A stretch of 63,601 nucleotides of DNA, filler included, from Octopus bimaculoides (taxonomy: Eukaryota): NCBI RefSeq assembly GCF_001194135.2. It is 6 parts of 5 records of this genome, joined end to end, with 100 filler letters (N's around TTAATTAATTAA, not from the genome) between each part and the next. Parts side by side here need not be neighbours in the genome. Positions count along the whole stretch, not along the records: positions 10,068 to 23,298 come from NC_068984.1; 5 more parts are not named here. One strand, 5' to 3'. Within the stretch, counting starts at the first letter, position 1, and each line of letters begins with the position of its first letter. The position numbers were made by a program, and so were the translations under genes. Under the pieces are notes generated by a model. The model was not told the origin of the DNA, did no database searches, and saw only the letters and a program-made list of their open reading frames with translations. This document shows, piece after piece, positions 10,068 to 23,398 of the stretch.

Positions 10068-10104
<37 letters not shown>

Positions 10105-10749
10105 ATACATATATGTATATATATATATATATATATTCATACATGCATACATATATATGTATATATATATATAATGTATGTATGTATGTATATAAATATG
10201 TATGTATATATTTATATATGTATGCATGTATATATATCTGTATGTTACTGTTAATAACAATAGCACCCCTCTACCACGCTACACAATATGACAACTAAAG
10301 ACGGAATGAGAGAAGGTAAAAACACAGATACAAACAGTATAACAAACAGTATATAACCCATATACAAACACACAAGACATACATATACATACTTAAGATG
10401 AAATGAGGAAAAAAAGTACAAGAAATAGATAAGTAAATAAACGAATTAAAAAGCTAAACAAAAGACATGGGTAAAAACTGTGTAGTAAGCAAACCCATAT
10501 ATAGGCACACAAAACACATACTAAACACACACACACACACACACACACACTGATGCAAATGCATGCACAGGTAGGGATACACACCACATAAAGACAGAAT
10601 GGACTAAACAGAAGAGGCAGAAACACGTGGGATAGAGAGACATTGATGAGGTCACAGGATGTGTGATGAAAGATTTCAGACAAAGGAGACTAAAATAAGA
10701 ATAATAAAGAATAGGTATATAGTGCATGTGGTTATTTGGTTAAAAAAAA

Positions 10750-10990: not shown

Positions 10991-11258
10991 CTGTGTACAT
11001 ACACACATATGATGGTCTGAGCACTGAGTTTAAAGTTTTCCTGCTAAATTGTTATAGGTTAGTGGTTTAATGGAAACGATCAAGAGGAAAATGGTTTTTG
11101 AGCAGAATTAATTGCTCAGAAAAGAAAGATTAAGAAAAAAACGCTGTCACTGCTGTTTTAAAGCTTTGAAGCAAAATAGCATTTTCTAAATTGTTAGTGA
11201 AATATTAAGAAACATGGAAAAATAAAATATTGGAAATCAGAAATTTTAAAGTTTCATT

Positions 11259-12380
11259 TCAACAAAAATCAAATTCTTTGAAAATTGGTCGATCTTCAAT
11301 GGGTGTGTTCAGTTTAGAAAAACGACGGGAAAAGTGATGTCTTGGATGATGTCTTGAGAAATGATCAAATGGTGGTCTGTCATATCTACAATTCCATGTA
11401 AAATCTGCTTTATCTTGGCCTTTTTCAAAACTTTGGTGAAAAGGGCCATGTTGGCCAAAATTTTCTGGTTTGCCAAAATGACGATAGCTATCAAAATGCC
11501 ATTCTTTGGGAGAATAGGAAGAATCATGTTTTTGCCTTGGCATCTGAAAGAAGCTGTTTTCAGATGGGTGACAGTTGTATTCATAATTTGGTCTTTGGAA
11601 AAATTTCGGACCTACAAAGTGATCTGGTCCACCATAATAACAAGGGGTGTTAAAATGACCTCTTGTATGAGATTGCCATGGAGCATTAAATTGCCATGGA
11701 TTCATGAAGTGATCTGGACCTCCATACATAGATGGTGTATTAAAGTAATATGGCGCATCATGACAGTCAAGATAGTGATTTGGTCCACCATAAAAGCAGG
11801 GTACCTCAAAATGATTGCCTCTACCAGGAGAATCATGATGACCTCTCCTGCTGAAAAAAGGAGGAATATCAGAATAGTGTGGTCTTCTAAACTGATCAAA
11901 ATGCTCTGAATGGTTGGGGAAATTATGATTCCCAAAATGCCTCCCCATATGGCAAGAAGAATCGGCATGAAATTCGTCATGTTTACTCCGATTTAGATTC
12001 TCAGTCTTGGAATCTTCACATTCTTTGTCTTTTGAATTGTCCTTCTCATGGCAGAAACAATTAGAATGATCTGGAAAAGTATTCCAGCCACTTCTAAAAT
12101 AGTTAGGATGGCAACAATCATTTTGGTATTGACCAAAAAATCCAGGAAATTGGTGACTCCCTTCAGATATCTGTCTCTCTTTCATTGGATTGCAATTAGA
12201 AAATTTTCCATGCTTCCAAGAGTTACATGGAGTTTTCTTGGATGTATCTTTCTCAGTGTTCTTCTCTTCTGCTGCAGCAGGTATGTTTTCTTTATCAACA
12301 TGCTCTTTGGCATCTGTTACCTTCAAATTTTGGTCTTTGTTGACTTCAGGAATTTCTTTCTTGCCGCTTTTTTCAGCCAT
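11259..12380 (-). CDS. Orphan 373-aa His/Phe/Pro/Gly-rich low-complexity protein with three YGGP(D/N)H repeats; single coding exon
   Basis: Uninterrupted 1122-nt ORF in otherwise ORF-poor DNA. Kozak context ACAATGG. In-frame TAA 9 nt upstream. Polypyrimidine tract + CAG acceptor ending at 12404 (exon starts 12403, 23 nt before ATG). Possible ATTAAA at 11066-11071. About 9% His and 10% Phe but only 4 Leu (hand count). No signal peptide or TM segment seen. Confidence 0.8.
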   Translation of the reverse strand: MAEKSGKKEIPEVNKDQNLKVTDAKEHVDKENIPAAAEEKNTEKDTSKKTPCNSWKHGKFSNCNPMKERQISEGSHQFPGFFGQYQNDCCHPNYFRSGWNTFPDHSNCFCHEKDNSKDKECEDSKTENLNRSKHDEFHADSSCHMGRHFGNHNFPNHSEHFDQFRRPHYSDIPPFFSRRGHHDSPGRGNHFEVPCFYGGPNHYLDCHDAPYYFNTPSMYGGPDHFMNPWQFNAPWQSHTRGHFNTPCYYGGPDHFVGPKFFQRPNYEYNCHPSENSFFQMPRQKHDSSYSPKEWHFDSYRHFGKPENFGQHGPFHQSFEKGQDKADFTWNCRYDRPPFDHFSRHHPRHHFSRRFSKLNTPIEDRPIFKEFDFC

Positions 12381-12636
12381 TGTAAATTATTTTGTATGTT
12401 GTTCTGTAAGATACAATAAAAAAGAAAAATAGAGAAAACAAATATTATAAAACATATTAAACAAAAATATTTTAAATACTGACAATGTACTTTTTCACAT
12501 TGTGAATTTTGAATGTGAGCATGTGCATGTATATGCATGCATACCTATCTAGGGTTAGTTTTCTGTCACTACAGAACCCCCCCACACACACACACACACT
12601 CACAATACTAGATCATGCATATATTTGATGTTTATA

Positions 12637-12960
12637 CAGGGTGCAGTGAATAAACTGTCATTCAAATTATGCAAAACTGAAAATAACAGACATCCTATTT
12701 TAATGTTGACCAAAATTACATGAAAATATCTTGAAATACTAAAGAGTAAATTTATTCAATAAAATCGCCATTGGCTTCAACCATGGCTTCCAGATGACTT
12801 CAGAATCTTCTGCAACTCTTCTGGACGATCTTGTTTAAGTTGGTGAATGCTGCCATAATCCTTGCCATCAGTTCATCTTTGGTGTTACAAGGGGTTTTGT
12901 TGGTCTCTCACTCAACATAATAATCAAGGAGGTTGCAGTCTGGGGAGTTAGGTGGCATTT
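12637..12960 (-). mobile_element. Tc1/mariner (maT/DD37D-like) 3' remnant with TIR; second longer copy at 60860-61490
   Basis: Terminus TA-CAGGGTGCAGTG. The minus strand encodes PPNSPDCNLLDYY..TKDELMARIMAAFTNLNK..EAMVEANGDFIE*. Nearly the same sequence recurs at 60860-61170. Confidence 0.85.
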
Positions 12961-13047
12961 CAGTTAACAAATACCAAAGTTCTAATATTGGAGAGCATAA
13001 AATATCATTTTCATCTGGAGAGAAGCCTTGCACAGTATATGGGGAGT

Positions 13048-13048
<1 letters not shown>

Positions 13049-13120
<72 letters not shown>
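13049..13120. repeat. (CA)n microsatellite; the window has dozens of (CA)n, (TA)n, (TATG)n, (GA)n, (AAT)n, (TAC)n tracts (e.g. 16590-16685, 21325-21390, 24638-24698, 30007-30056, 37500-37568, 56381-56472)
   Basis: Direct sequence. Most N gaps start or end in such tracts, and they generate the low-complexity ORFs in the track. Confidence 0.97.
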
Positions 13121-13122
<2 letters not shown>

Positions 13123-13763
13123 TAAATTAATAAAAAAAAATACTAAGTATGTCTACCTGCTGGAAATAACAGTCAAAACTATTATTTAAATTGCCAAAAT
13201 ACACTGATGATAACTACAGAACTCAGCTGAAGGTAGATCAGGTTAATAAAATCTCCTAACATACATTTAAGCATTTGGACTCACATGGACCAGTTTCTGT
13301 ACTGGCAAAACCACCTTAGCTTCTTTAGCACACGTTACCATGATGGAGACCCCCAACCTATCATTTTGAAGTCTGTGCCACAACTGATACATTTATATCA
13401 TCATCATAATCATTTAACGTCTGTTGTCCATGCTGGCATGGGTTGGATGGTTTGACCAGTGTTGGTAAGCTGGAAAGCTGCACTAGACTCCAGTCTGATT
13501 TGGCATGGTTTTCTATGGCTGGACACACTTCCTAACACTTCAAGAGTGTGATGGGTGCCATCAGCATGAGTGCCATTTGCACAACACCAGTATCTGCCAT
13601 GACTGTGATTTTGCACAGCTTGATGGGTCTTATTCTCAAGCACCACATAATATCAAAGGTCTGTCATTGCCTCTGTGAGGCCTGATGCTCGAAAGGAACT
13701 CAGCTACAGTGCACAAAAGCAGGGCAGATCTTCGGCCTCAGTCACGAGACCCTTGCCTGAACC

Positions 13764-13818
<55 letters not shown>

Positions 13819-13827
13819 CATGAGTGT

Positions 13828-14110
13828 GTGAAGGCACATAGCTCAGTGGTTTGAGCGTTGGGATCACAATTATGAGGTATGAGGTAGTGAGTTTGATTCC
13901 CAGACCAGGCTGTGTGTTGTGTTCTTGAGGAAGACACTTTATTTCACATCATTCCAGTTCACTCAGTTGTAAAAATGAGTTACGATGTCACTGGAGCCTT
14001 TCTCTTGGATAACATCAGTGGCTTGAAGAGGGGAGACTGGTATGCATGGGTGACTTGTCCAGACTCGTGCAATCTATGTGCAATCCCATGATCATTCATG
14101 ACCGAAGGGG
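13828..14110 (+). mobile_element. SINE family C (tRNA head, cttgagcaagacacttt domain); other copies 37790-38070(+), 45035-45245(+), 46870-47090(-), 47850-48120(-), 48885-49165(+), 51500-51805(-), 53700-54050(-), 62418-62800(+), 62915-63225(+)
   Basis: In copy 62418: A box TGGCCCAGTGG and B box GGTTTCGATTCC. Shared blocks ccagt(c/t)cactcagctg..aaaatgagt and gctgttccgttgatcg..ctgg.accctcgtcgtcgt. Confidence 0.85.
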
Positions 14111-14119
14111 TTCTTTACC

Positions 14120-14171
<52 letters not shown>

Positions 14172-15743
14172 TTGAGCCCTTCGCTCCCTAAAGAGCATAG
14201 GCCATCTATGACAACTTTCCACTGTTCTTGACTCTGGGTTGTCCTTTCTCTCTTAGGTCTTGAATTGTTTTGAATTGTCTCAGGTCTTGAATTAAGTTTA
14301 CTTTTCATTTTAGCTAGCCAGGTGTGTTGGAACTCTGTAAACCCAGTGTTACCCCAGAGAAGAGGAAGTCCATATTAATCTGACATCTGCCCAGCACTTC
14401 ACTGGCATAGCTCTTATGATCACTGTCACACACAAGCCATCATATTAGAACAAGGACTGGATCTTGTGATAAAGACAAATATTTTAATACTCTATATCAA
14501 GTGCAAACAATAGTCACAAAAGATACAGTGGGATCATTAGCTGATGGATAGCCAACAACTTTTAATGGCATAAATGTTGAGGTGTCATAAGTAGTTGCAG
14601 CATTAATGTAACAAAGTCTATGAATTACTCATATGGTTCACTCAGAGTAGTAAACAATTTCTGTTAACTAGGTGACCTAATTATTACTGGAATATAACTA
14701 TTTGTGAATATATCGAAGGTAGACTAACAAAATAGGGGAGGAAATTTTAGGGGCTTTTGTGGTTGTTAAGTCCCACATCTGCCCTAGGTAAAGAAACAAA
14801 CCTATGATTAAAAACATTCTGTTCATGACTTTACAATCTCTCTCTGAAGACATGGTATATCAAGGTCTACACCATTCAATATGTCTATTTATTTTTTAAA
14901 GCTATTTGGGTGTGATTTGAGAGAAATTTGATAGCTATTTGTGAATAAAAAGTGTGGCTTAAAATACATTATTTTGTTTTTTTTTACATCTGGTTTTCTA
15001 AGCTTTAGCTCTAAAGTTGACAAACTACATTTTAATTCTCTGTGACACATTTTCCAGCAATAATCTATTGATAAATAATTGGTTGAGAATATATTTTATT
15101 GAAATTATGTACTGGTTATATAAAAAGAGCAAAAATTTACATTAGTAAAGAGCTGGGAAAGTAAGAAATATCTAATATGTTGACAAAAGTATTTTACTAT
15201 AGAATGAAGGGTAACTTAGGTTATTTTTGAGGCATTGACACCTGCTATAGTGGCCCTTGAGCCAATAAGAGAGTGTCCAGGCAGTCATTTCAACTGCTTG
15301 AAACAGAAGTCATTAAATCTTTCTTAAATTGCAAAAAAACATTTTTAAACAAAAGGAAGTATGTAGACCTTAGTACACTAATATATATGATGTAGAACTA
15401 GACAAAGCAGTTGTTAGTGTTGTTGTGATTTTAGCCTTCATAAGCAAACATGTGGTCAAAGGCTTTTGAAAAGATCCAGCAGTTATTTAGGTAAGCCCTT
15501 TGCTTGTTATGGAGAAGAAGTCATGGATGACTTTTCTCCACTATTCTTGACTCTGGGCTGTCATTTCCTTTCACAAGTCTTGTTGGCTTTGAATTTTTAT
15601 TGATGCTTCTGTAACTTTGCTTTTCTTTTCCTGGGTAGGGGTGTAGGCCCTACACAAACCCATTTTACCTAGGAACAGGTAGTTCATATTGTTCAGGTTT
15701 GCATTATTTGACCTTTCTGGATTTTTATTCCTACCAAATGCAT

Positions 15744-16450
15744 TGAGTAGAGATATTGCATCAAGTTTTGCCAAACATTTGATGATACTCCAGCTCATAC
15801 CACCCAGAAGAGTCAGCAGGCCTTTGGTGACGATGCCATGGACAGAACTCAGATCAAGGACTGGTACAACTGCTTCAAACATGGCAATGTCTCAGTGGAG
15901 AGCAAGGCATGCTCAGGCATGCCATCCACAAGCCAGAAGGAAATGATGATTGAGATGGTTCAGCAAATAGTCATGGAATACCCTCATGTAAGAAATCAGA
16001 AAATTGCTCACAAAGTGGGAATAAGCACGGAAACAGTGAATTCCATTTTAACAGAGGATTTGTGCATGCAGAGAGTGTCAGCAAAATTCATCCACAAGGC
16101 ACAGACAGAGCAGCAGAAGAAACTTCACATGGAAATCATTCAGGACATACTAGACTGTGCAAACCGCAACCAAGACTTCATGAAGACTGTCATTAATGGT
16201 GATGAGACGTAGGCTTGTGGTCTCTGCTCAATGAGTTCAGTCATCTTGCATGAAAATGAAAATCTGATGAGCATGCACTACACCTCTGTACTCTAAGCAG
16301 AGCAGCTAGGAACTGATGCGGCCTACTGGTGCAAACATTTTCATGCATGCACAGGAAGGGTGGCATGACCTCTTGCTCAAAGGATTTTGCCCATAAAGCA
16401 TCAGTTTTGGTGGTAAAAAATAAAATTGGATACTTTTTGGACACACTTTG
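15744..16450 (+). mobile_element. mariner transposon remnant (HTH region to GDET, internally deleted, right TIR)
   Basis: RYCIKFCQ..QQAFGDDAMDRTQIKDWYNCFKHG..IAHKVGIS..LCMQRVSAKF..VINGDET*. The 3' end aaaattggatactttttggacacac..TA resembles a mariner TIR. Confidence 0.88.
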
Positions 16451-16590: not shown

Positions 16591-17989
16591 TGTATGTATG
16601 TATGTATGTATGTATGTATGTATGTATGTATGTATGCATGCATGTATGTATGTATGTATGTATGTATGTATGTATGTATGTATGTGTGCAGATTTGTATG
16701 TTTTGCTTTATGTATGTCTTCTCGTGCATATACTTGCATATCTAGACATGCTCATATCATATTTAAATGATAAACTTCTGGAAAGTTTTACAGATTTTTA
16801 CAGTTCCAGTAATGGATTGGATCTGTAGTCTTCGAATCAGCTTTCTCCATTCTGGTTTTGAGAAGCCTAATTTCTCAAGATTGGTATTTAGGCAGTGTGT
16901 TACATATCCCAAGGCCCCAATAATTACAGGTATAAACCTGAACTTGTAATCTGGATAGAGTAACTAGATTTCTCAATAGTTCAGCATAGGTGTTCTCTTT
17001 TTCACTGATCTTCAGCTTTATAATGTCTGTCTGTCTGTCTGTATGTATGTGTGTGTATACATGTTTATGTAAATAGTTATATATCCACATATATGTACCA
17101 ACATACATACAAATATATAACATATATACGTACATGCATACATCAAAGTTTCAGAGATGTCTCTCACACCCTGTCACAAAAATATGTAAATAAGCAGATT
17201 GTCTTTCTCCCAATATCAAAATTATCTCTATCAATCCCTCTGTTTATAGCTATAATTAACATAGTGAATTGTTTTTAAATTTGGAATAATGAGAGTTAAT
17301 TATACATACTGATTAATTGTCTAAACTGACCAGTTTAACAAGAGTAGGAGGAGCTGAGTAGACAAAAATAAACAACATTTATAAACTAAAATACTAAAAC
17401 AAAAATATTACTAAGGACATCTATTAAATTTCTTTTCTCTACAAATTACTGAAATGAAAAGCTGTTATGCAACTTTTTTTTTTGTCAAAGACAAAAACAA
17501 GAACAAGTTGTGTAACTCATGACAACAATCATCACAACCATCAATATCGACCACCACCACCACCACTACCACTAAGACAACCTTTATGTGATCGATTCAC
17601 ATACAGGTTACGGCAGCTGTCAAACCTCTTTCGTATCATGTTGTACCATTCAAAAAAAAAATGGAAGGTCACATAGGACAGTGTAGGTATTATAAAAGAT
17701 ACACCAGCAGCAGCAACAGCAATAATCTACCCACCACAATTTCATTGTTGCTTGCAATGAGTTAATAAAGTTTATCCTAAAACACACACAGACATATCAA
17801 GTGTTTGACTGTTTGTTCTGGACCAGATCTTTGACGAAGATTGGGTTTGCTGTATAAACCTGTATAGGCTAAGGTGGTCAGGGCAGTTGGGGTAGTAAAT
17901 ACACAGGCTACACTGGGTGGAACACACCCAAGCTAAGCCATTGAGTTGATACAGCAAATTTGTATATTACTCATGTTATTTATTAGTAC

Positions 17990-18660: not shown

Positions 18661-20841
18661 GTGTATGACGGATCCAACTAATAGACAAATACATCATGAG
18701 GATTTCCATGCCAATTATCTTCTCTAGTGAAGGTGACATGCTTGCACATAGTACACTCTACAGAAAACGAATGGAGAATACATAGAGAGAGGAAACTCTA
18801 GTTTGTTTTGTTTAAGACAACCTTGTCAGTGGTGATACCACAATGAAATGCACTCAATAAAACTTTTTAGGATGGCTGTTGTTAGGAAAGGAATCCAGCC
18901 ATAGAAACCAAGCCAAATCACAAGTAAAACTGAGGTTTTCTGACTTTCTAGTTTAGTAGTTGTTCTGAATAAGAAATGACAAATCCAATTCAGGAACAGC
19001 ATGGAAAGCAAATACAAAATACTGCTGATGTACACAAGTGTGCATGTGCATACACACACACACACATGCAGATACATACATACATACATACATACATACA
19101 TACATACATACACATATGCATATATACATGCATACAAGCATCCATGTATACATAGATAAGTCTTGTTATTATCTGTCTAATGATAAGGAACATGGTTAGG
19201 TCAATTAGATTATAAAAGTCAAAGTGTTGGCACTGAGTGTCAGGAAGTTTTAAAAACACTGAGTCTGACAAAACACATTTTGTTTTGTCTCAAAAGTGTT
19301 TTCATACAAAACAAAGCTTGCTGTGATGGACTTGTTGTTTTCATCATTTTAAACACATACACATAAAGGCAATATAATATAAACATAAAACAATATATTG
19401 GATTATGGAATGCTAATGCTCATACTTCATAAAGCTTATATAACTGAAATATGTATGTCTGTGTGTGTGTGTATATACATATAAACACACACACACATAT
19501 ACATTCACGTACACATTTGCAGGTTTTGTTAAATGCTGACGCATTTACGCTATCTATTGCAAATACTTTACTATATTTCACCTGACCTTATTCAACGTTA
19601 TTACTAAATGAAAAAANNNNNNNNNNNNNNNNNNNNNNNNNNNNNNNNNNNNNNNNNNNNNNNNNNNNNNNNNNNNNNNNNNNNNNNNNNNNNNNNNNNN
19701 NNNNNNNNNNNNNNNNNNNNNNNNNNNNNNNNNNNNNNNNNNNNNNNNNNNNNNNNNNNNNNNNNNNNNNNNNNNNNNNNNNNNNNNNNNNNNNNNNNNN
19801 NNNNNNNNNNNNNNNNNNNNNNNNNNNNNNNNNNNNNNNNNNNNNNNNNNNNNNNNNNNNNNNNNNNNNNNNNNNNNNNNNNNNNNNNNNNNNNNNNNNN
19901 NNNNNNNNNNNNNNNNNNNNNNNNNNNNNNNNNNNNNNNNNNNNNNNNNNNNNNNNNNNNNNNNNNNNNNNNNNNNNNNNNNNNNNNNNNNNNNNNNNNN
20001 NNNNNNNNNNNNNNNNNNNNNNNNNNNNNNNNNNNNNNNNNNNNNNGAGTGTGGCCATTGCCAGTACCGCCTGACTGGCCTTCGTGCCAGTGGCACGTAA
20101 AAAGCACCCACTACACTGAGTGGCTGGCATTAGGAAGGGCATCCAGCTGTAGAAACTCTGCCAAATCAGATTGGAGCCTGGTGTAGCCATCTGGTTTCCC
20201 CAGTCCTCAGTCAAATCATCCAACCCATGCTAGCATGGAAAGCGGACGTTAAACGACGACGACGATGATGATGATGATGTATATACATGTCACATGTATA
20301 CACACATATACATTCACGTACACATTTGCAGGTTTTGTTAAATGCTGACGCATTTACGCTATCTATTGCAAATACTTTACTATATTTCACCTGACCTTAT
20401 TCAACGTTATTACTAAATGAAAAAAAAAAAAAANNNNNNNNNNNNNNNAAAAAAAAACACTTCATGGATTCAAATTTCCCCTAGATAAATTTCTGCAAAA
20501 ACATTTTGTCCTTGAAAAATTTTATTTTTCTAGAGCTAAGTCAGAGAGAGAAATGCCATGCCTTAAACTCTTTTGCACGCTTCCAAAGACGAAATACAGA
20601 TACCAGATCTCAGTGCTTACAACAAATTTTTCTCTGCTAATGTACGCAAGAAGCAGGTAGTTTTGATAAAATAGTTGATAAAATACTCTACTATTATATT
20701 GTATTAGTTAGTTTAGTCCTAAAAATAACTTTTGGCTTCAAGTGCTAGTTTCATGATAGCACATGTAGTGGAGTTAAGTTGAAGTTAATTATGACACCAT
20801 AACTAGCTGAAAGTTATGGCAGGACTAGTGTTGCATGTAAA

Positions 20842-20936: not shown

Positions 20937-21288
20937 GATAATGATGCACCATGTATGTATACATATATATATATTTGCCTTCGAAACGCAGAGTAGTTGA
21001 AACAGGGACAACTGACGAAGGGGTATACTCTTTATGTTGCATGTCTCGTTTCTTGTTTGTTTTTTCGTTGTTCGAAAAATGTTCGTTTCCATGTTTTCGT
21101 TTCTCATTATTTTTAACGTTTTTTTGATGTCCTATACCCATATATGCATGTATGTGTACATATAGATGTAGGTATGTACATATATGTATGGATATATGCA
21201 TATATTTATATATTATTTATATTATTATACATATATATATATATGTATGTATGTATGATAGATAGATAAATAGATAGATAAAGAGGGC

Positions 21289-21397
<109 letters not shown>

Positions 21398-21800: not shown

Positions 21801-21994
21801 ACTATAATTATAACTATAATTATAAACTGCGGTTTAAACAATAAATTACCTGCCTCTGGATACCCTCTAATGAAGACGGTACCCACACAAGTAATTCCCA
21901 GGTGTACCTCCGGATTTAAACATCCCCTGGTTGCTTGGATACTTCAGACTACCCCTGAAAAATTGAAGCAATCCTATCATTTACCTATATATAT

Positions 21995-22027
<33 letters not shown>

Positions 22028-23398
22028 GTTTAACGTCCGCTTTCCATGCTAGCATGGGTTGGACGATTTGACNNNNNNNNNNNNNNNNNNNNNNNNNNNN
22101 NNNNNNNNNNNNNNNNNNNNNNNNNNNNNNNNNNNNNNNNNNNNNNNNNNNNNNNNNNNNNNNNNNNNNNNNNNNNNNNNNNNNNNNNNNNNNNNNNNNN
22201 NNNNNNNNNNNNNNNNNNNNNNNNNNNNNNNNNNNNNNNNNNNNNNNNNNNNNNNNNNNNNNNNNNNNNNNNNNNNNNNNNNNNNNNNNNNNNNNNNNNN
22301 NNNNNNNNNNNNNNNNNNNNNNNNNNNNNNNNNNNNNNNNNNNNNNNNNNNNNNNNNNNNNNNNNNNNNNNNNNNNNNNNNNNNNNNNNNNNNNNNNNNN
22401 NNNNNNNNNNNNNNNNNNNNNNNNNNNNNNNNNNNNNNNNNNNNNNNNNNNNNNNNNNNNNNNNNNNNNNNNNNNNNNNNNNNNNNNNNNNNNNNNNNNN
22501 NNNNNNNNNNNNNNNNNNNNNNNNNNNNNNNNNNNNNNNNNNNNNNNNNNNNNNNNNNNNNNNNNNNNNNNNNNNNNNNNNNNNNNNNNNNNNNNNNNNN
22601 NNNNNNNNNNNNNNNNNNNNNNNNNNNNNNNNNNNNNNNNNNNNNNNNNNNNNNNNNNNNNNNNNNNNNNNNNNNNNNNNNNNNNNNNNNNNNNNNNNNN
22701 NNNNNNNNNNNNNNNNNNNNNNNNNNNNNNNNNNNNNNNNNNNNNNNNNNNNNNNNNNNNNNNNNNNNNNNNNNNNNNNNNNNNNNNNNNNNNNNNNNNN
22801 NNNNNNNNNNNNNNNNNNNNNNNNNNNNNNNNNNNNNNNNNNNNNNNNNNNNNNNNNNNNNNNNNNNNNNNNNNNNNNNNNNNNNNNNNNNNNNNNNNNN
22901 NNNNNNNNNNNNNNNNNNNNNNNNNNNNNNNNNNNNNNNNNNNNNNNNNNNNNNNNNNNNNNNNNNNNNNNNNNNNNNNNNNNNNNNNNNNNNNNNNNNN
23001 NCATTGCATTGTGGAGATTTTAGGCTACTGCCTTGAAGTGTTAAGCCGAAGACATAAACTCCAGTCCTGATCTTTTTTTTATTTTACAAGTCTGTTACTT
23101 ATTCCATCTGTCTCTTAGACCAAACTGCTAAGTTATGGGAACAAAAACAAACCAACACTGGCAGTCAAGCTGTAGTGAGGGACAAACACAAAGAAACACA
23201 CACACATGCACACGTATGTATGCATGTACACACGTACACACACACAGCACCTACCCACCCACACACTATAAATGCACATTCATATTTGTATGCGTACANN
23301 NNNNNNNNNNNNNNNNNNNNNNNNNNNNNNNNNNNNNNNNNNTTAATTAATTAANNNNNNNNNNNNNNNNNNNNNNNNNNNNNNNNNNNNNNNNNNNN

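What the first reader, a model, noticed from the sequence alone, without database searches (positions are those of the whole stretch)
11259..12380. Intact orphan gene for a His/Phe-rich, aliphatic-poor 373-aa protein
Seen in sequence: a clean single coding exon with splice acceptor, upstream in-frame stop and Kozak ATG. By hand count it has ~34 His, ~38 Phe, 14 Cys and only 4 Leu. It has a charged Lys/Glu N-terminus (1-50, 112-135), an aromatic/His/Gly/Pro-rich centre and an Arg/His C-terminal patch (RHHPRHHFSRRF). No signal peptide is visible. Established: cephalopods have lineage-specific aromatic- or His-rich disordered proteins that self-assemble (reflectins, histidine-rich beak proteins, suckerins). 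This ORF lacks the reflectin MD repeats and the GHG/GGY repeats of those families. Inference: a possibly new intracellular phase-separating or metal-binding structural protein.
Basis: partly seen in the sequence, partly recalled or inferred. Interest (0 to 1): 0.75.

Follow-up and report, generated by a model that had tools for sequence, protein, structure and literature searches.

The report
Octopod-only disordered His/Phe-rich protein gene
This is a real, intact gene found so far only in octopuses and argonauts; it encodes a structureless protein rich in histidine and phenylalanine and almost free of leucine, and selection has kept that odd make-up more than the exact sequence, but its function is untested.

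Summary
Window 11259-12380 (-) is a 373-codon ORF with 38 Phe, 34 His, 14 Cys and 4 Leu, far longer than chance allows. It has a conserved splice acceptor, an in-frame TAA at -9 and an ACAATGG start.

It is not a strict orphan. Intact orthologues exist in Octopus vulgaris/sinensis (LOC115210916, 84%), an unidentified octopodid (78%) and Argonauta hians (40-45%). Nothing credible was found outside incirrate octopods among 1.84 billion representative proteins. dN/dS is 0.33-0.64.

Pfam and PDB give no hits. AlphaFold gives pLDDT 31.6, which fits disorder. Reflectin, beak-protein and suckerin motifs are absent, and there is no signal peptide.

The new result is that composition is under selection. 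At the 204 sites where Argonauta differs, Leu and Ile stay at 1% and His and Phe at 7.8%. Phe and Pro positions are preferentially invariant. Net charge is near zero at pH 7.4 in all four orthologues. Predicted refractive increment is 0.200-0.201, at crystallin level.

Two invariant terminal motifs point to partner docking: EHVxKENIP, which is KEN-box-like, and the C-terminal FSKLxxPIExRPIFKEFDFC.

Best reading: an intracellular sticker-and-spacer disordered protein that self-associates in a pH- or metal-sensitive way. That function is inferred, not shown.

The parts
11259..12380 (-). Complete CDS, 373 aa plus the TGA stop (11259-11261); single coding exon
   Evidence: intact orthologous ORFs of 359-379 aa in 4 other genomes/contigs, dN/dS 0.33-0.64
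12404..12440 (-). Polypyrimidine tract plus acceptor AG (12405-12404); the coding exon begins at 12403
   Evidence: identical in the Octopus species, and polypyrimidine+TTGCAG is kept at the equivalent place in Argonauta (dS~1) while further upstream cannot be aligned
12381..12403 (-). 23-nt 5' UTR portion of the coding exon, with the in-frame TAA at 12387-12389 and the ACAATGG start context
   Evidence: TAA at -9 in all four species
12279..12305 (-). aa 26-34, EHVDKENIP: invariant island in a variable Lys/Glu-rich N-terminus; KEN-box-like motif (D-K-E-N-x-P)
   Evidence: invariant runs EHV and KENIP. Calling it an APC/C degron is inference from the published KEN consensus, not tested here.
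12048..12230 (-). aa 51-111, Cys/His-containing segment; H57, H76, C89, C108, C110 and H111 (NCxCH) are invariant
   Evidence: Possible metal ligands, but AlphaFold gives no confident fold here.
11961..12047 (-). aa 112-140, acidic/Lys-rich spacer (pI 5.15, almost no aromatics)
11322..11960 (-). aa 141-353, aromatic/His/Pro/Gly-rich, aliphatic-poor core. It holds most of the protein's 10 HF dipeptides. Aromatic residues are more evenly spaced than in shuffles (aa 141-373). Predicted dn/dc over aa 141-373 is 0.205.
11616..11813 (-). aa 190-255, three degenerate repeats HF..P[CS]xYGGP[ND]H[FY] (cores at aa 194-203, 216-225, 246-255)
   Evidence: the pattern HF..PxxYGxP is retained in Argonauta
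11262..11321 (-). aa 354-373, FSKLNTPIEDRPIFKEFDFC: the most conserved segment (RPIFKEFDFC is invariant) and the only part where AlphaFold pLDDT rises (~57, short helical turns); a probable docking motif

Best explanation
Shown: this is a real single-copy protein-coding gene, found so far only in incirrate octopods. It has one coding exon preceded by a 5'-UTR intron. The product is a 373-aa, non-secreted protein predicted to be disordered. Selection preserves its composition (about 10% Phe, 9% His, 9% Pro, only 8-10% aliphatic residues), the positions of its Phe and Pro residues, and two terminal linear motifs. Inferred: the protein works as a sticker-and-spacer disordered protein. The evenly spaced Phe/Tyr/Trp/His residues of aa 141-353 act as multivalent contacts that drive reversible self-association into a condensate or a dense cytoplasmic phase. 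The ~30 titratable His residues place the net charge at about zero at cytosolic pH, so a small drop in pH (about +20 at pH 6), or Zn/Cu binding, would switch association off or on. The invariant C-terminal 20-mer and the N-terminal EHVDKENIP island are handles that dock it to a partner and/or control its abundance, the latter by KEN-type APC/C recognition.
For: Gene reality: the ORF is 375 codons against a shuffle maximum of 207. Five intact orthologous ORFs give dN/dS 0.33-0.64, with dS up to 1.0-1.2. The acceptor, the TAA at -9 and the start context are conserved. Restriction: only octopod hits came from two word-indexed searches and an exhaustive phmmer over 1.84e9 representatives. The extra hit P0007 is a low-complexity repeat match. 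Disorder: Pfam gives 0 hits at E<=10, PDB gives none below E=0.5, AlphaFold mean pLDDT is 31.6 with pTM 0.12, and the protein lies on the unfolded side of the charge-hydropathy plot. Selection on composition: all four orthologues have F 37-41, H 31-34, C 13-14 and LIVAM 8.0-9.8% despite 42% identity. Phe and Pro are preferentially invariant (OR 3.5, p=5e-4; OR 4.7, p=8e-5), while Ser, Asp and Ala are variable. At the 204 Argonauta positions that differ, Leu is 1.0% against 10.0% expected (p=2.5e-7), Ile 1.0% against 8.2% (p=9e-6), His 7.8% against 3.2% (p=8.5e-4) and Phe 7.8% against 3.9% (p=0.009). Patterning: aromatic spacing in aa 140-373 is more even than in 98.4% of shuffles, and HF dipeptides number 10 against 3.5 expected (p=5.5e-4). 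pH switch: computed net charge at pH 7.4 is -0.8 to -4.0 and at pH 6 is +18 to +23 in all four. Motifs: the invariant runs are KENIP, EHV, FSKL, PIE and RPIFKEFDFC, and the C-terminus is the only region with raised pLDDT. Precedent: His deprotonation together with aromatic contacts drives coacervation of squid beak HBPs, and charge neutralisation drives reflectin assembly (review PMC11931252).
Against: There is no experimental or expression evidence of any kind: no transcript contig, tissue or localisation was reachable. Low pLDDT from a 4-sequence alignment is weak evidence for disorder. Aromatic evenness is only modestly significant (p~0.016) and disappears when aa 55-140 are included or His is counted. 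Composition-level selection also fits the refractive, metal-binding or multi-partner-binding rivals. A KEN tripeptide in a K/E/N-rich segment is expected by chance at roughly 0.1-0.2 per protein, so only its conservation argues for function, and no D-box (RxxL) is present in any orthologue. Charge values use generic pKa values.
Confidence: 0.4

Rival explanations
1. Regulatory hub or cell-cycle/germline protein. The function lies in the short linear motifs: KEN-box recognition by APC/C and the C-terminal docking motif, possibly as a fast-evolving securin-like or inhibitor-like disordered protein. The His/Phe-rich centre is then a tolerated or partner-binding linker, not a self-association module.
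For: The only strictly invariant runs are terminal motifs. EHVxKENIP fits the D-K-E-N-x-P style of strong KEN boxes (my knowledge of the APC/C degron consensus). RPIFKEFDFC is invariant at dS~1 and is the only region with raised pLDDT. Rapid evolution (dN/dS 0.33-0.64), disorder and lineage restriction are typical of such regulators.
Against: This rival does not explain why composition is maintained at the variable sites, or why 63% of Phe and 70% of Pro positions in the centre are invariant. There is no D-box. No solved complex contains a peptide resembling either motif. A single KEN can occur by chance.
Confidence: 0.2
2. High-refractive-index cytoplasmic protein. It would be an octopod analogue of reflectins or lens crystallins, selected to raise the refractive index in an optical tissue such as iridophores, leucophores, lens or cornea.
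For: Predicted dn/dc is 0.2013 ml/g, held at 0.2002-0.2013 in all four orthologues, and 0.2047-0.2054 for aa 141-end. The human proteome averages 0.1899 (SD 0.0030), betagamma-crystallins 0.1999, and the maximum reported is 0.209 (PMC4047532). Crystallins and reflectins likewise enrich polarisable residues at the expense of aliphatic ones (PMC11118217; PMC11931252). The protein is intracellular, with no signal peptide.
Against: High dn/dc follows automatically from any Phe/His-rich composition. The protein keeps 27 Lys (low dn/dc), whereas crystallins replace Lys with Arg. The invariant terminal docking motifs and the KEN-like motif are unexpected for a bulk optical protein. No expression data exist. 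The per-residue dn/dc table was recalled from memory: 4 values were checked against papers, and calibration on gammaS-crystallin gave 0.1988 against the published 0.1984.
Confidence: 0.15
3. Intracellular metal (Zn/Cu/Ni) buffer, store or chaperone that uses His and Cys ligands.
For: The protein has 34 His and 14 Cys, and the counts are conserved (31-34 His, 13-14 Cys). H57, H76, C89, C108, C110 and H111 are invariant. His enrichment is maintained at variable sites.
Against: Only 4 of 14 Cys and 14 of 34 His positions are invariant. Phe and Pro are the preferentially conserved residues, which metal binding does not explain. There are no poly-His runs or known metal-binding motifs. AlphaFold finds no ordered zinc-finger-like element.
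Confidence: 0.1
4. Not a functional protein gene: a chance ORF, a pseudogene or a transposon-derived ORF.
For: The gene sits among mariner-like remnants and SINE-like repeats. It is unannotated functionally. Long antisense ORFs overlap it.
Against: The ORF is 1.8x the longest shuffle ORF. It is intact in five copies across dS>1, with dN/dS well below 1. Each genome yielded only one protein. It has no transposase domain. The start context and acceptor are conserved. The antisense ORF is shorter and differently bounded in O. vulgaris: 130 aa against 182 aa.
Confidence: 0.02

Closest known systems
Reflectins (cephalopod iridophore/leucophore proteins)
   Same: Both are cephalopod-restricted, intracellular (no signal peptide) and disordered. 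Both are strongly depleted in aliphatic residues and enriched in polarisable aromatic/His residues, giving a high predicted refractive increment. In both, assembly would plausibly be governed by charge neutralisation.
   Different: No sequence similarity was found in any search. There are 0 MD dipeptides and 0 MDx5MDx5MDx3-4 repeat motifs, and no conserved reflectin N-terminal domain. This protein is Phe-rich and Met-poor (1.6% Met), whereas reflectins are Met/Tyr/Arg-rich. It has Lys/Glu-rich segments and unique terminal motifs. It is single-copy and octopod-only.
Histidine-rich beak proteins (HBP-1/2, Dosidicus gigas)
   Same: Both are His- and aromatic-rich disordered proteins. The proposed pH switch, in which His deprotonation allows aromatic-driven coacervation, is modelled on them.
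   Different: The GHGxY and GAGFA/GFA pentapeptide repeats are absent (0 counts). The protein is Gly- and Ala-poor by comparison. It has no signal peptide, whereas HBPs act extracellularly in the beak's chitin network. Its repeats are only 3 degenerate PxxYGGPxHF units.
Suckerins (squid sucker ring teeth)
   Same: Both have Gly/Tyr/His content and proline-flanked modules in a cephalopod-specific structural protein family.
   Different: There are no M1 (Ala/Val/Thr/Ser/His beta-sheet) or M2 (GGY/GGLY/GLGGY) modules (0 counts). Ala is 2.4% and Leu 1.1%. Suckerins form the extracellular sucker ring teeth of decapodiforms.
Lens crystallins (vertebrate betagamma, cephalopod S-crystallins)
   Same: Predicted dn/dc of 0.200-0.201 equals the betagamma-crystallin mean and is reached the same way, by enriching polarisable residues at the expense of aliphatic ones.
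   Different: Crystallins are compact folded domains (Greek key, GST fold). This protein has no predicted fold and no sequence relationship to them, and it keeps many Lys residues.
KEN-box-bearing disordered APC/C substrates (e.g. securin, Cdc20 N-terminus)
   Same: Both have an N-terminal D-K-E-N-x-P type motif within a disordered, fast-evolving protein, together with a separately conserved C-terminal partner-binding segment.
   Different: There is no D-box and no detectable homology. The composition is unlike securins. Degron function is untested. The resemblance is recalled from knowledge of the motif, not from a tool result.

Membership tests
Reflectin | Repeating motifs MDx5(MDx5)nMDx3-4 (PMC11931252) | tested here: not met
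   The regex gave 0 matches in all four orthologues; MD dipeptides number 0, 0, 0 and 1.
Reflectin | Conserved N-terminal domain MEPMSRMTMDF.. and detectable sequence homology to reflectins | tested here: not met
   The N-terminus is MAEKSGKKEIPEV... No reflectin appears among the hits of the exhaustive phmmer or the profile searches.
Reflectin | Aliphatic-poor, polarisable-residue-rich composition; intracellular | tested here: met
   LIVAM is 8.0%, F+Y+W+H is 25%, dn/dc is 0.2013 and there is no signal peptide. This is a resemblance only and is not sufficient for membership.
Histidine-rich beak protein (HBP) | C-terminal tandem pentapeptides GHGxY/GHGxH and GAGFA/GFA (PMC11931252) | tested here: not met
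   0 GHG.. and 0 GAGFA/GFA/GxGxA in all orthologues.
Histidine-rich beak protein (HBP) | Acts extracellularly in the beak, so a secretion signal is expected (my knowledge) | tested here: not met
   The N-terminus is hydrophilic; the maximum Kyte-Doolittle 10-residue mean in the first 50 aa is -0.19.
Suckerin | P[M1]P[M2] modular repeats: M1 = AATAVS/HTTHHA-type, M2 = GGY/GGLY/GLGGY | tested here: not met
   All counts are 0.
APC/C KEN-box substrate | Conserved KEN tripeptide in a disordered region, preferably D/N-KEN-x(1-2)-P | tested here: met
   DKENIP at aa 29-34. KENIP is invariant in four orthologues and lies in a region with pLDDT ~33.
APC/C KEN-box substrate | Cdh1/Cdc20-dependent ubiquitination and cell-cycle-dependent degradation | not testable with these tools
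   This needs degradation and ubiquitination assays.
Sticker-and-spacer phase-separating disordered protein (functional class, not a homology family) | Disorder; many aromatic stickers, conserved in number and evenly spaced; composition conserved more than sequence | tested here: met
   pLDDT is 31.6. There are 59 F/Y/W; F positions have OR 3.5 for invariance; the spacing CV2 is 0.42 against 0.76 in shuffles (p 0.016) for aa 140-373. Composition is kept at the variable sites.
Sticker-and-spacer phase-separating disordered protein (functional class, not a homology family) | Demonstrated concentration-, pH- or salt-dependent demixing in vitro or in cells | not testable with these tools
   This needs recombinant protein and imaging.
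Any Pfam family / solved structure | Significant profile or sequence match | tested here: not met
   Pfam gives 0 families at E<=10. The best PDB E-values are 0.57 and 0.81. The termini searched alone give 0 hits.

The most novel reading that the evidence does not exclude
This is the founding member of a previously unrecognised, octopod-specific family of intracellular self-assembling proteins. It would be unrelated in sequence to reflectins but convergent with them. Its aromatic/His-rich, aliphatic-free core would form a pH-switchable, high-refractive-index dense phase, positioned or turned over through its invariant terminal motifs. That would make it a new optical or material protein of octopus tissues.
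Probability: 0.2. Interest if true: 0.75.

Novelty: new variant of a known kind. Interest (0 to 1): 0.5.

Why it matters
Cephalopod-specific disordered proteins (reflectins, beak proteins, suckerins) underlie lineage-defining traits and have become models for biomaterials and for phase-separation physics. All three were found through their tissues, mostly in squid. This locus would add an octopod-restricted, sequence-unrelated family found from the genome alone. It also provides an unusually clean natural experiment. Between Octopus and Argonauta, 58% of positions have changed, yet aliphatic residues remain about 10-fold excluded, His and Phe remain about 2-fold enriched at the changed sites, net charge stays at about zero at pH 7.4, and the predicted refractive increment stays within 0.001 ml/g. 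That makes 'composition as the selected phenotype' directly testable in one small, single-exon, easily expressed protein. If instead the KEN and C-terminal motifs dominate, it would be a lineage-specific cell-cycle or germline regulator. That is less striking, but still a new family.

Tried and rejected
(1) Spliced-transcript evidence. The three short Logan contigs (L001-L003) looked like possible mRNAs because they join sequence homologous to window 14599-14407 directly to 12444. Alignment showed that they keep the polypyrimidine tract and acceptor. The 'junction' is the absence of a mariner-type insertion that the window and O. vulgaris carry, so the contigs are genomic. Looking up the window protein itself in the assemblies found nothing, and O. 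sinensis gave only the chromosome.

(2) Distant homologues. The profile of four orthologues added nothing. The exhaustive phmmer gave one extra hit, P0007, rejected as a low-complexity tandem-repeat protein matched in five weak stretches. A C-terminal-motif-only profile search returned no hits at all, not even the orthologues that contain the query. I treat that as a technical failure, not as evidence.

(3) Structure. The AlphaFold model was too poor (pLDDT 31.6) to justify a fold search, so none was run.

(4) PDB sequence searches with the whole profile, the C-terminal profile and the N-terminal 60 aa found nothing meaningful.

(5) Literature. There were no papers for LOC115210916, the protein accessions or the SRA run numbers.

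(6) Synteny. Argonauta has an XAP5/FAM50 gene 5 kb downstream. tblastx did not find it within 10 kb in O. vulgaris, and the corresponding window side is cut off after 1.2 kb, so synteny is unresolved.

(7) Poly(A) signal. The only ATTAAA in the window's 3' flank (11066-11071) lies in a segment deleted in O. vulgaris/sinensis and altered in the Logan species. No conserved signal occurs within 500-700 nt, so the 3' end is undetermined.

(8) Candidate matches of the C-terminal motif to PAM2, TOS, RVxF, PIP-box, AP-2/GAE and PDZ-ligand consensus motifs were considered from memory. None fits well, so none is claimed.

(9) Pfam did not confirm the mariner-like ORF at 15838-16212. The transposase identity rests on visual resemblance only.
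Full report
OBSERVATION. The hand counts are exact: 38 Phe (10.2%), 34 His (9.1%), 33 Pro, 14 Cys and 4 Leu (1.1%). Ile, Val, Ala and Met are also rare, so L+I+V+A+M is 8.0%. The stop-to-stop length is 375 codons. The next longest N-free ORF in the piece is 183 codons, and 200 shuffles of the piece gave a mean of 109 and a maximum of 207. No tandem DNA repeat lies in the CDS, so the composition is not a microsatellite artefact. It is also not a by-product of AT-richness: from the CDS base composition one expects 10.7% Leu and 8.4% Ile, against 1.1% and 1.6% observed, and 4.3% Phe and 3.5% His, against 10.2% and 9.1% observed.

GENE STRUCTURE. On the minus strand, a 37-nt polypyrimidine tract ends in ...cttacAG at 12405-12404, so the exon starts at 12403. 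Twenty-three nucleotides later comes ACAATGG, with an in-frame TAA at -9. The TAA at -9 and the TACAATGG context are present in O. vulgaris, in an unidentified octopodid (Logan contigs) and in Argonauta hians. In Argonauta, where synonymous sites are saturated (dS~1) and the upstream DNA otherwise cannot be aligned, a polypyrimidine tract plus TTGCAG is still found about 22 nt before the ATG. This supports a functional 3' splice site and a 5'-UTR intron. Splicing itself could not be verified. The Logan contigs are genomic: what looked like a junction (window 14407|12444) is a mariner-type insertion present in the window and in O. vulgaris but absent in that species. No conserved poly(A) signal was found within 500-700 nt downstream.

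RELATIVES. The protein is not a strict orphan. Full-length orthologues are Octopus vulgaris CAI9720860, which clusters at 90% identity with O. sinensis XP_029635556-8, 'uncharacterized protein LOC115210916' (379 aa, 84% identity). There are also 376-aa proteins on contigs from runs SRR11869384/90/91 (78%) and Argonauta hians GAB1598051 (359 aa, 40-45%). A profile of the four found nothing more. An exhaustive phmmer over 1.84 billion representatives found only these plus one spurious low-complexity repeat protein. Octopus and Argonauta share the suborder Incirrata, so the family is at least that old, and only one protein per genome was recovered. Absence from decapodiforms is only as good as the gene models in those databases. 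Three RefSeq isoforms with identical protein in O. sinensis suggest alternative 5' UTRs. This is an inference from how NCBI models are built and was not checked.

SELECTION. All five copies are intact, with no frameshift or internal stop. Nei-Gojobori dN/dS is 0.64 (window against O. vulgaris, dS 0.10), 0.37-0.55 among Octopus-level pairs and 0.33-0.41 against Argonauta (dS 1.0-1.2). The gene is therefore coding and constrained, but fast-evolving. The 3' flank and the upstream flank are about 88-91% identical to O. vulgaris, which is close to the synonymous level, so nothing beyond the CDS, acceptor and start stands out.

WHAT IS CONSERVED. Of the positions, 36% are invariant. Phe (24 of 38; OR 3.5, p=5e-4) and Pro (23 of 33; OR 4.7, p=8e-5) are preferentially invariant, while Ser, Asp and Ala are preferentially variable. 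Residue counts are held constant even where positions are not: F 37-41, H 31-34, C 13-14, LIVAM 8.0-9.8%. The key test is the 204 aligned positions at which Argonauta differs from the window protein. There the replacing residues are still 1.0% Leu (expected 10.0%, p=2.5e-7), 1.0% Ile (8.2%, p=9e-6), 7.8% His (3.2%, p=8.5e-4) and 7.8% Phe (3.9%, p=0.009). Composition itself is therefore under selection. Invariant runs of three or more residues are KKEI (7-10), EHV/KENIP (26-34), KNT (40-42), RPH, GGP, PWQF (228-231), PKE, HFG, GPFH (312-315), FSKL (354-357), PIE and RPIFKEFDFC (364-373). The centre carries three degenerate repeats, HF..P[CS]xYGGP[ND]H[FY]. HF dipeptides are about 3-fold over-represented (10 against 3.5, p=5.5e-4).

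STRUCTURE AND PHYSICAL PROPERTIES. Pfam gives no family at E<=10, and PDB gives nothing below E=0.5. AlphaFold2 on the four-sequence alignment gives mean pLDDT 31.6 and pTM 0.12, with essentially no secondary structure. Only aa ~358-371 reach about 57. The alignment is shallow, so this is supportive and not conclusive. The charge-hydropathy position (<H> 0.347 against a boundary of 0.416) agrees with disorder. There is no signal peptide or TM segment. Computed net charge is -0.8 to -4.0 at pH 7.4 and +18 to +23 at pH 6.0 in all four orthologues, so a zero-crossing at cytosolic pH is a conserved property. Aromatic residues in aa 140-373 are more evenly spaced than in 98.4% of shuffles. Predicted refractive increment is 0.2013 ml/g, and 0.2002-0.2013 across the orthologues; for aa 141-end it is 0.2047-0.2054. 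The human proteome averages 0.1899 with SD 0.0030, betagamma-crystallins average 0.1999, and the maximum is about 0.209 (PMC4047532). The per-residue table was recalled from memory. Four values were checked against papers, and calibration on human gammaS-crystallin gave 0.1988 against the published 0.1984.

COMPARISON WITH KNOWN FAMILIES. I used the definitions in the review PMC11931252. Reflectin repeat motifs (MDx5MDx5MDx3-4), HBP pentapeptides (GHGxY, GAGFA/GFA) and suckerin modules (AATAVS/HTTHHA; GGY/GGLY/GLGGY) are all absent from all four orthologues. The protein is therefore not a member of any of these families. It resembles reflectins in being intracellular, aliphatic-poor and rich in polarisable residues. 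It resembles HBPs in pairing His with aromatic residues. Unlike both, it is Phe-rich and not Tyr/Met- or Gly-rich, it has Lys/Glu-rich segments, and it has unique invariant terminal motifs. D-K-E-N-I-P fits the strong form of the APC/C KEN box (my knowledge of the consensus). No D-box is present. I could not match the C-terminal 20-mer to any linear-motif class I know.

INTERPRETATION. The following are shown: a real, single-copy gene restricted to incirrate octopods; a non-secreted product; predicted disorder; composition-level purifying selection; and two conserved terminal motifs. My best inference (confidence 0.4) is a sticker-and-spacer disordered protein. Its aromatic/His core would self-associate reversibly, poised at its isoelectric point in the cytosol and therefore switchable by small pH shifts or by metal binding. 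Its termini would dock it to a partner and/or control its turnover. The rivals are: a motif-driven regulatory protein such as an APC/C substrate (0.2); a high-refractive-index optical protein (0.15); a metal buffer (0.1); and a non-functional ORF (0.02). These readings partly overlap, and the remaining probability is 'something else'. None can be separated without expression and biochemical data.

VERDICT. Novelty: a new variant of a known kind, namely a cephalopod lineage-specific aromatic/His-rich disordered protein that is unrelated in sequence to the known families. Interest: 0.5.

Noticed in passing
window 12640-12960 (-) and about 15780-16212 (+): Degenerate mariner/Tc1-like transposase remnants. 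One is a C-terminal piece (..PPNSPDCNLLDYYVE*ETNKTPCNTKDELMARIMAAFTNLNKIV..) followed by a terminal repeat. The other is an N-terminal HTH-like piece (..QQAFGDDAMDRTQIKDWYNCFKHGNVSVESKACSGMPSTS..). The first is shared with O. vulgaris but absent at the orthologous site in the Logan octopodid, so it is an insertion that can be dated between those lineages. Pfam did not confirm either piece; the identification rests on resemblance.
   Followed up: partly
window 12956-14381: About 1.4 kb is present in the window but absent from O. vulgaris, where a 36-nt gap joins L004 9381 to 9417. The stretch contains (AC)n and (AT)n microsatellites and a copy of a dispersed repeat. It is a lineage-specific insertion in the putative 5'-UTR intron.
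   Followed up: partly
window 13397-13536, 20075-20288, 21986-22072: A short dispersed (SINE-like) repeat. It matches many places in the O. vulgaris locus (L004) and at least 10 places in the Argonauta locus (L005) at 70-90% identity, so it is an old, abundant octopod interspersed element. There were no Rfam hits in the piece.
   Followed up: no
window 11361-11909 (+): A 182-aa antisense ORF lies inside the gene, and another of 123 aa lies at 12048-12419 (+). In O. vulgaris the corresponding antisense ORF has different bounds (130 aa). It is most likely a by-product of a sense strand that is poor in codons whose reverse complement is a stop.
   Followed up: partly
window 19617-20046, 20434-20448, 22073-23001: Runs of N (assembly gaps) within the piece. 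All the 'ORFs' listed across them are artefacts. The piece is also dense in microsatellites: (TATA)n at 10068-10237, (AC)n at 13050-13120, (TGTA)n at 16591-16685, and GATA/AGAG arrays at 21257-21396.
   Followed up: no
L005 16261-20899 (-): In Argonauta hians the orthologue is followed 5 kb downstream, convergently, by an XAP5 (FAM50-like) gene. It was not found within 10 kb in O. vulgaris, and the corresponding side of the window is cut off, so synteny is unresolved.
   Followed up: partly
The search for homologous proteins with the 41-column C-terminal profile: The search returned no hit with E<=10, even though four database proteins contain the query segment exactly. The word-indexed search seems unreliable for very short profiles, so this negative result should not be used.
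   Followed up: no
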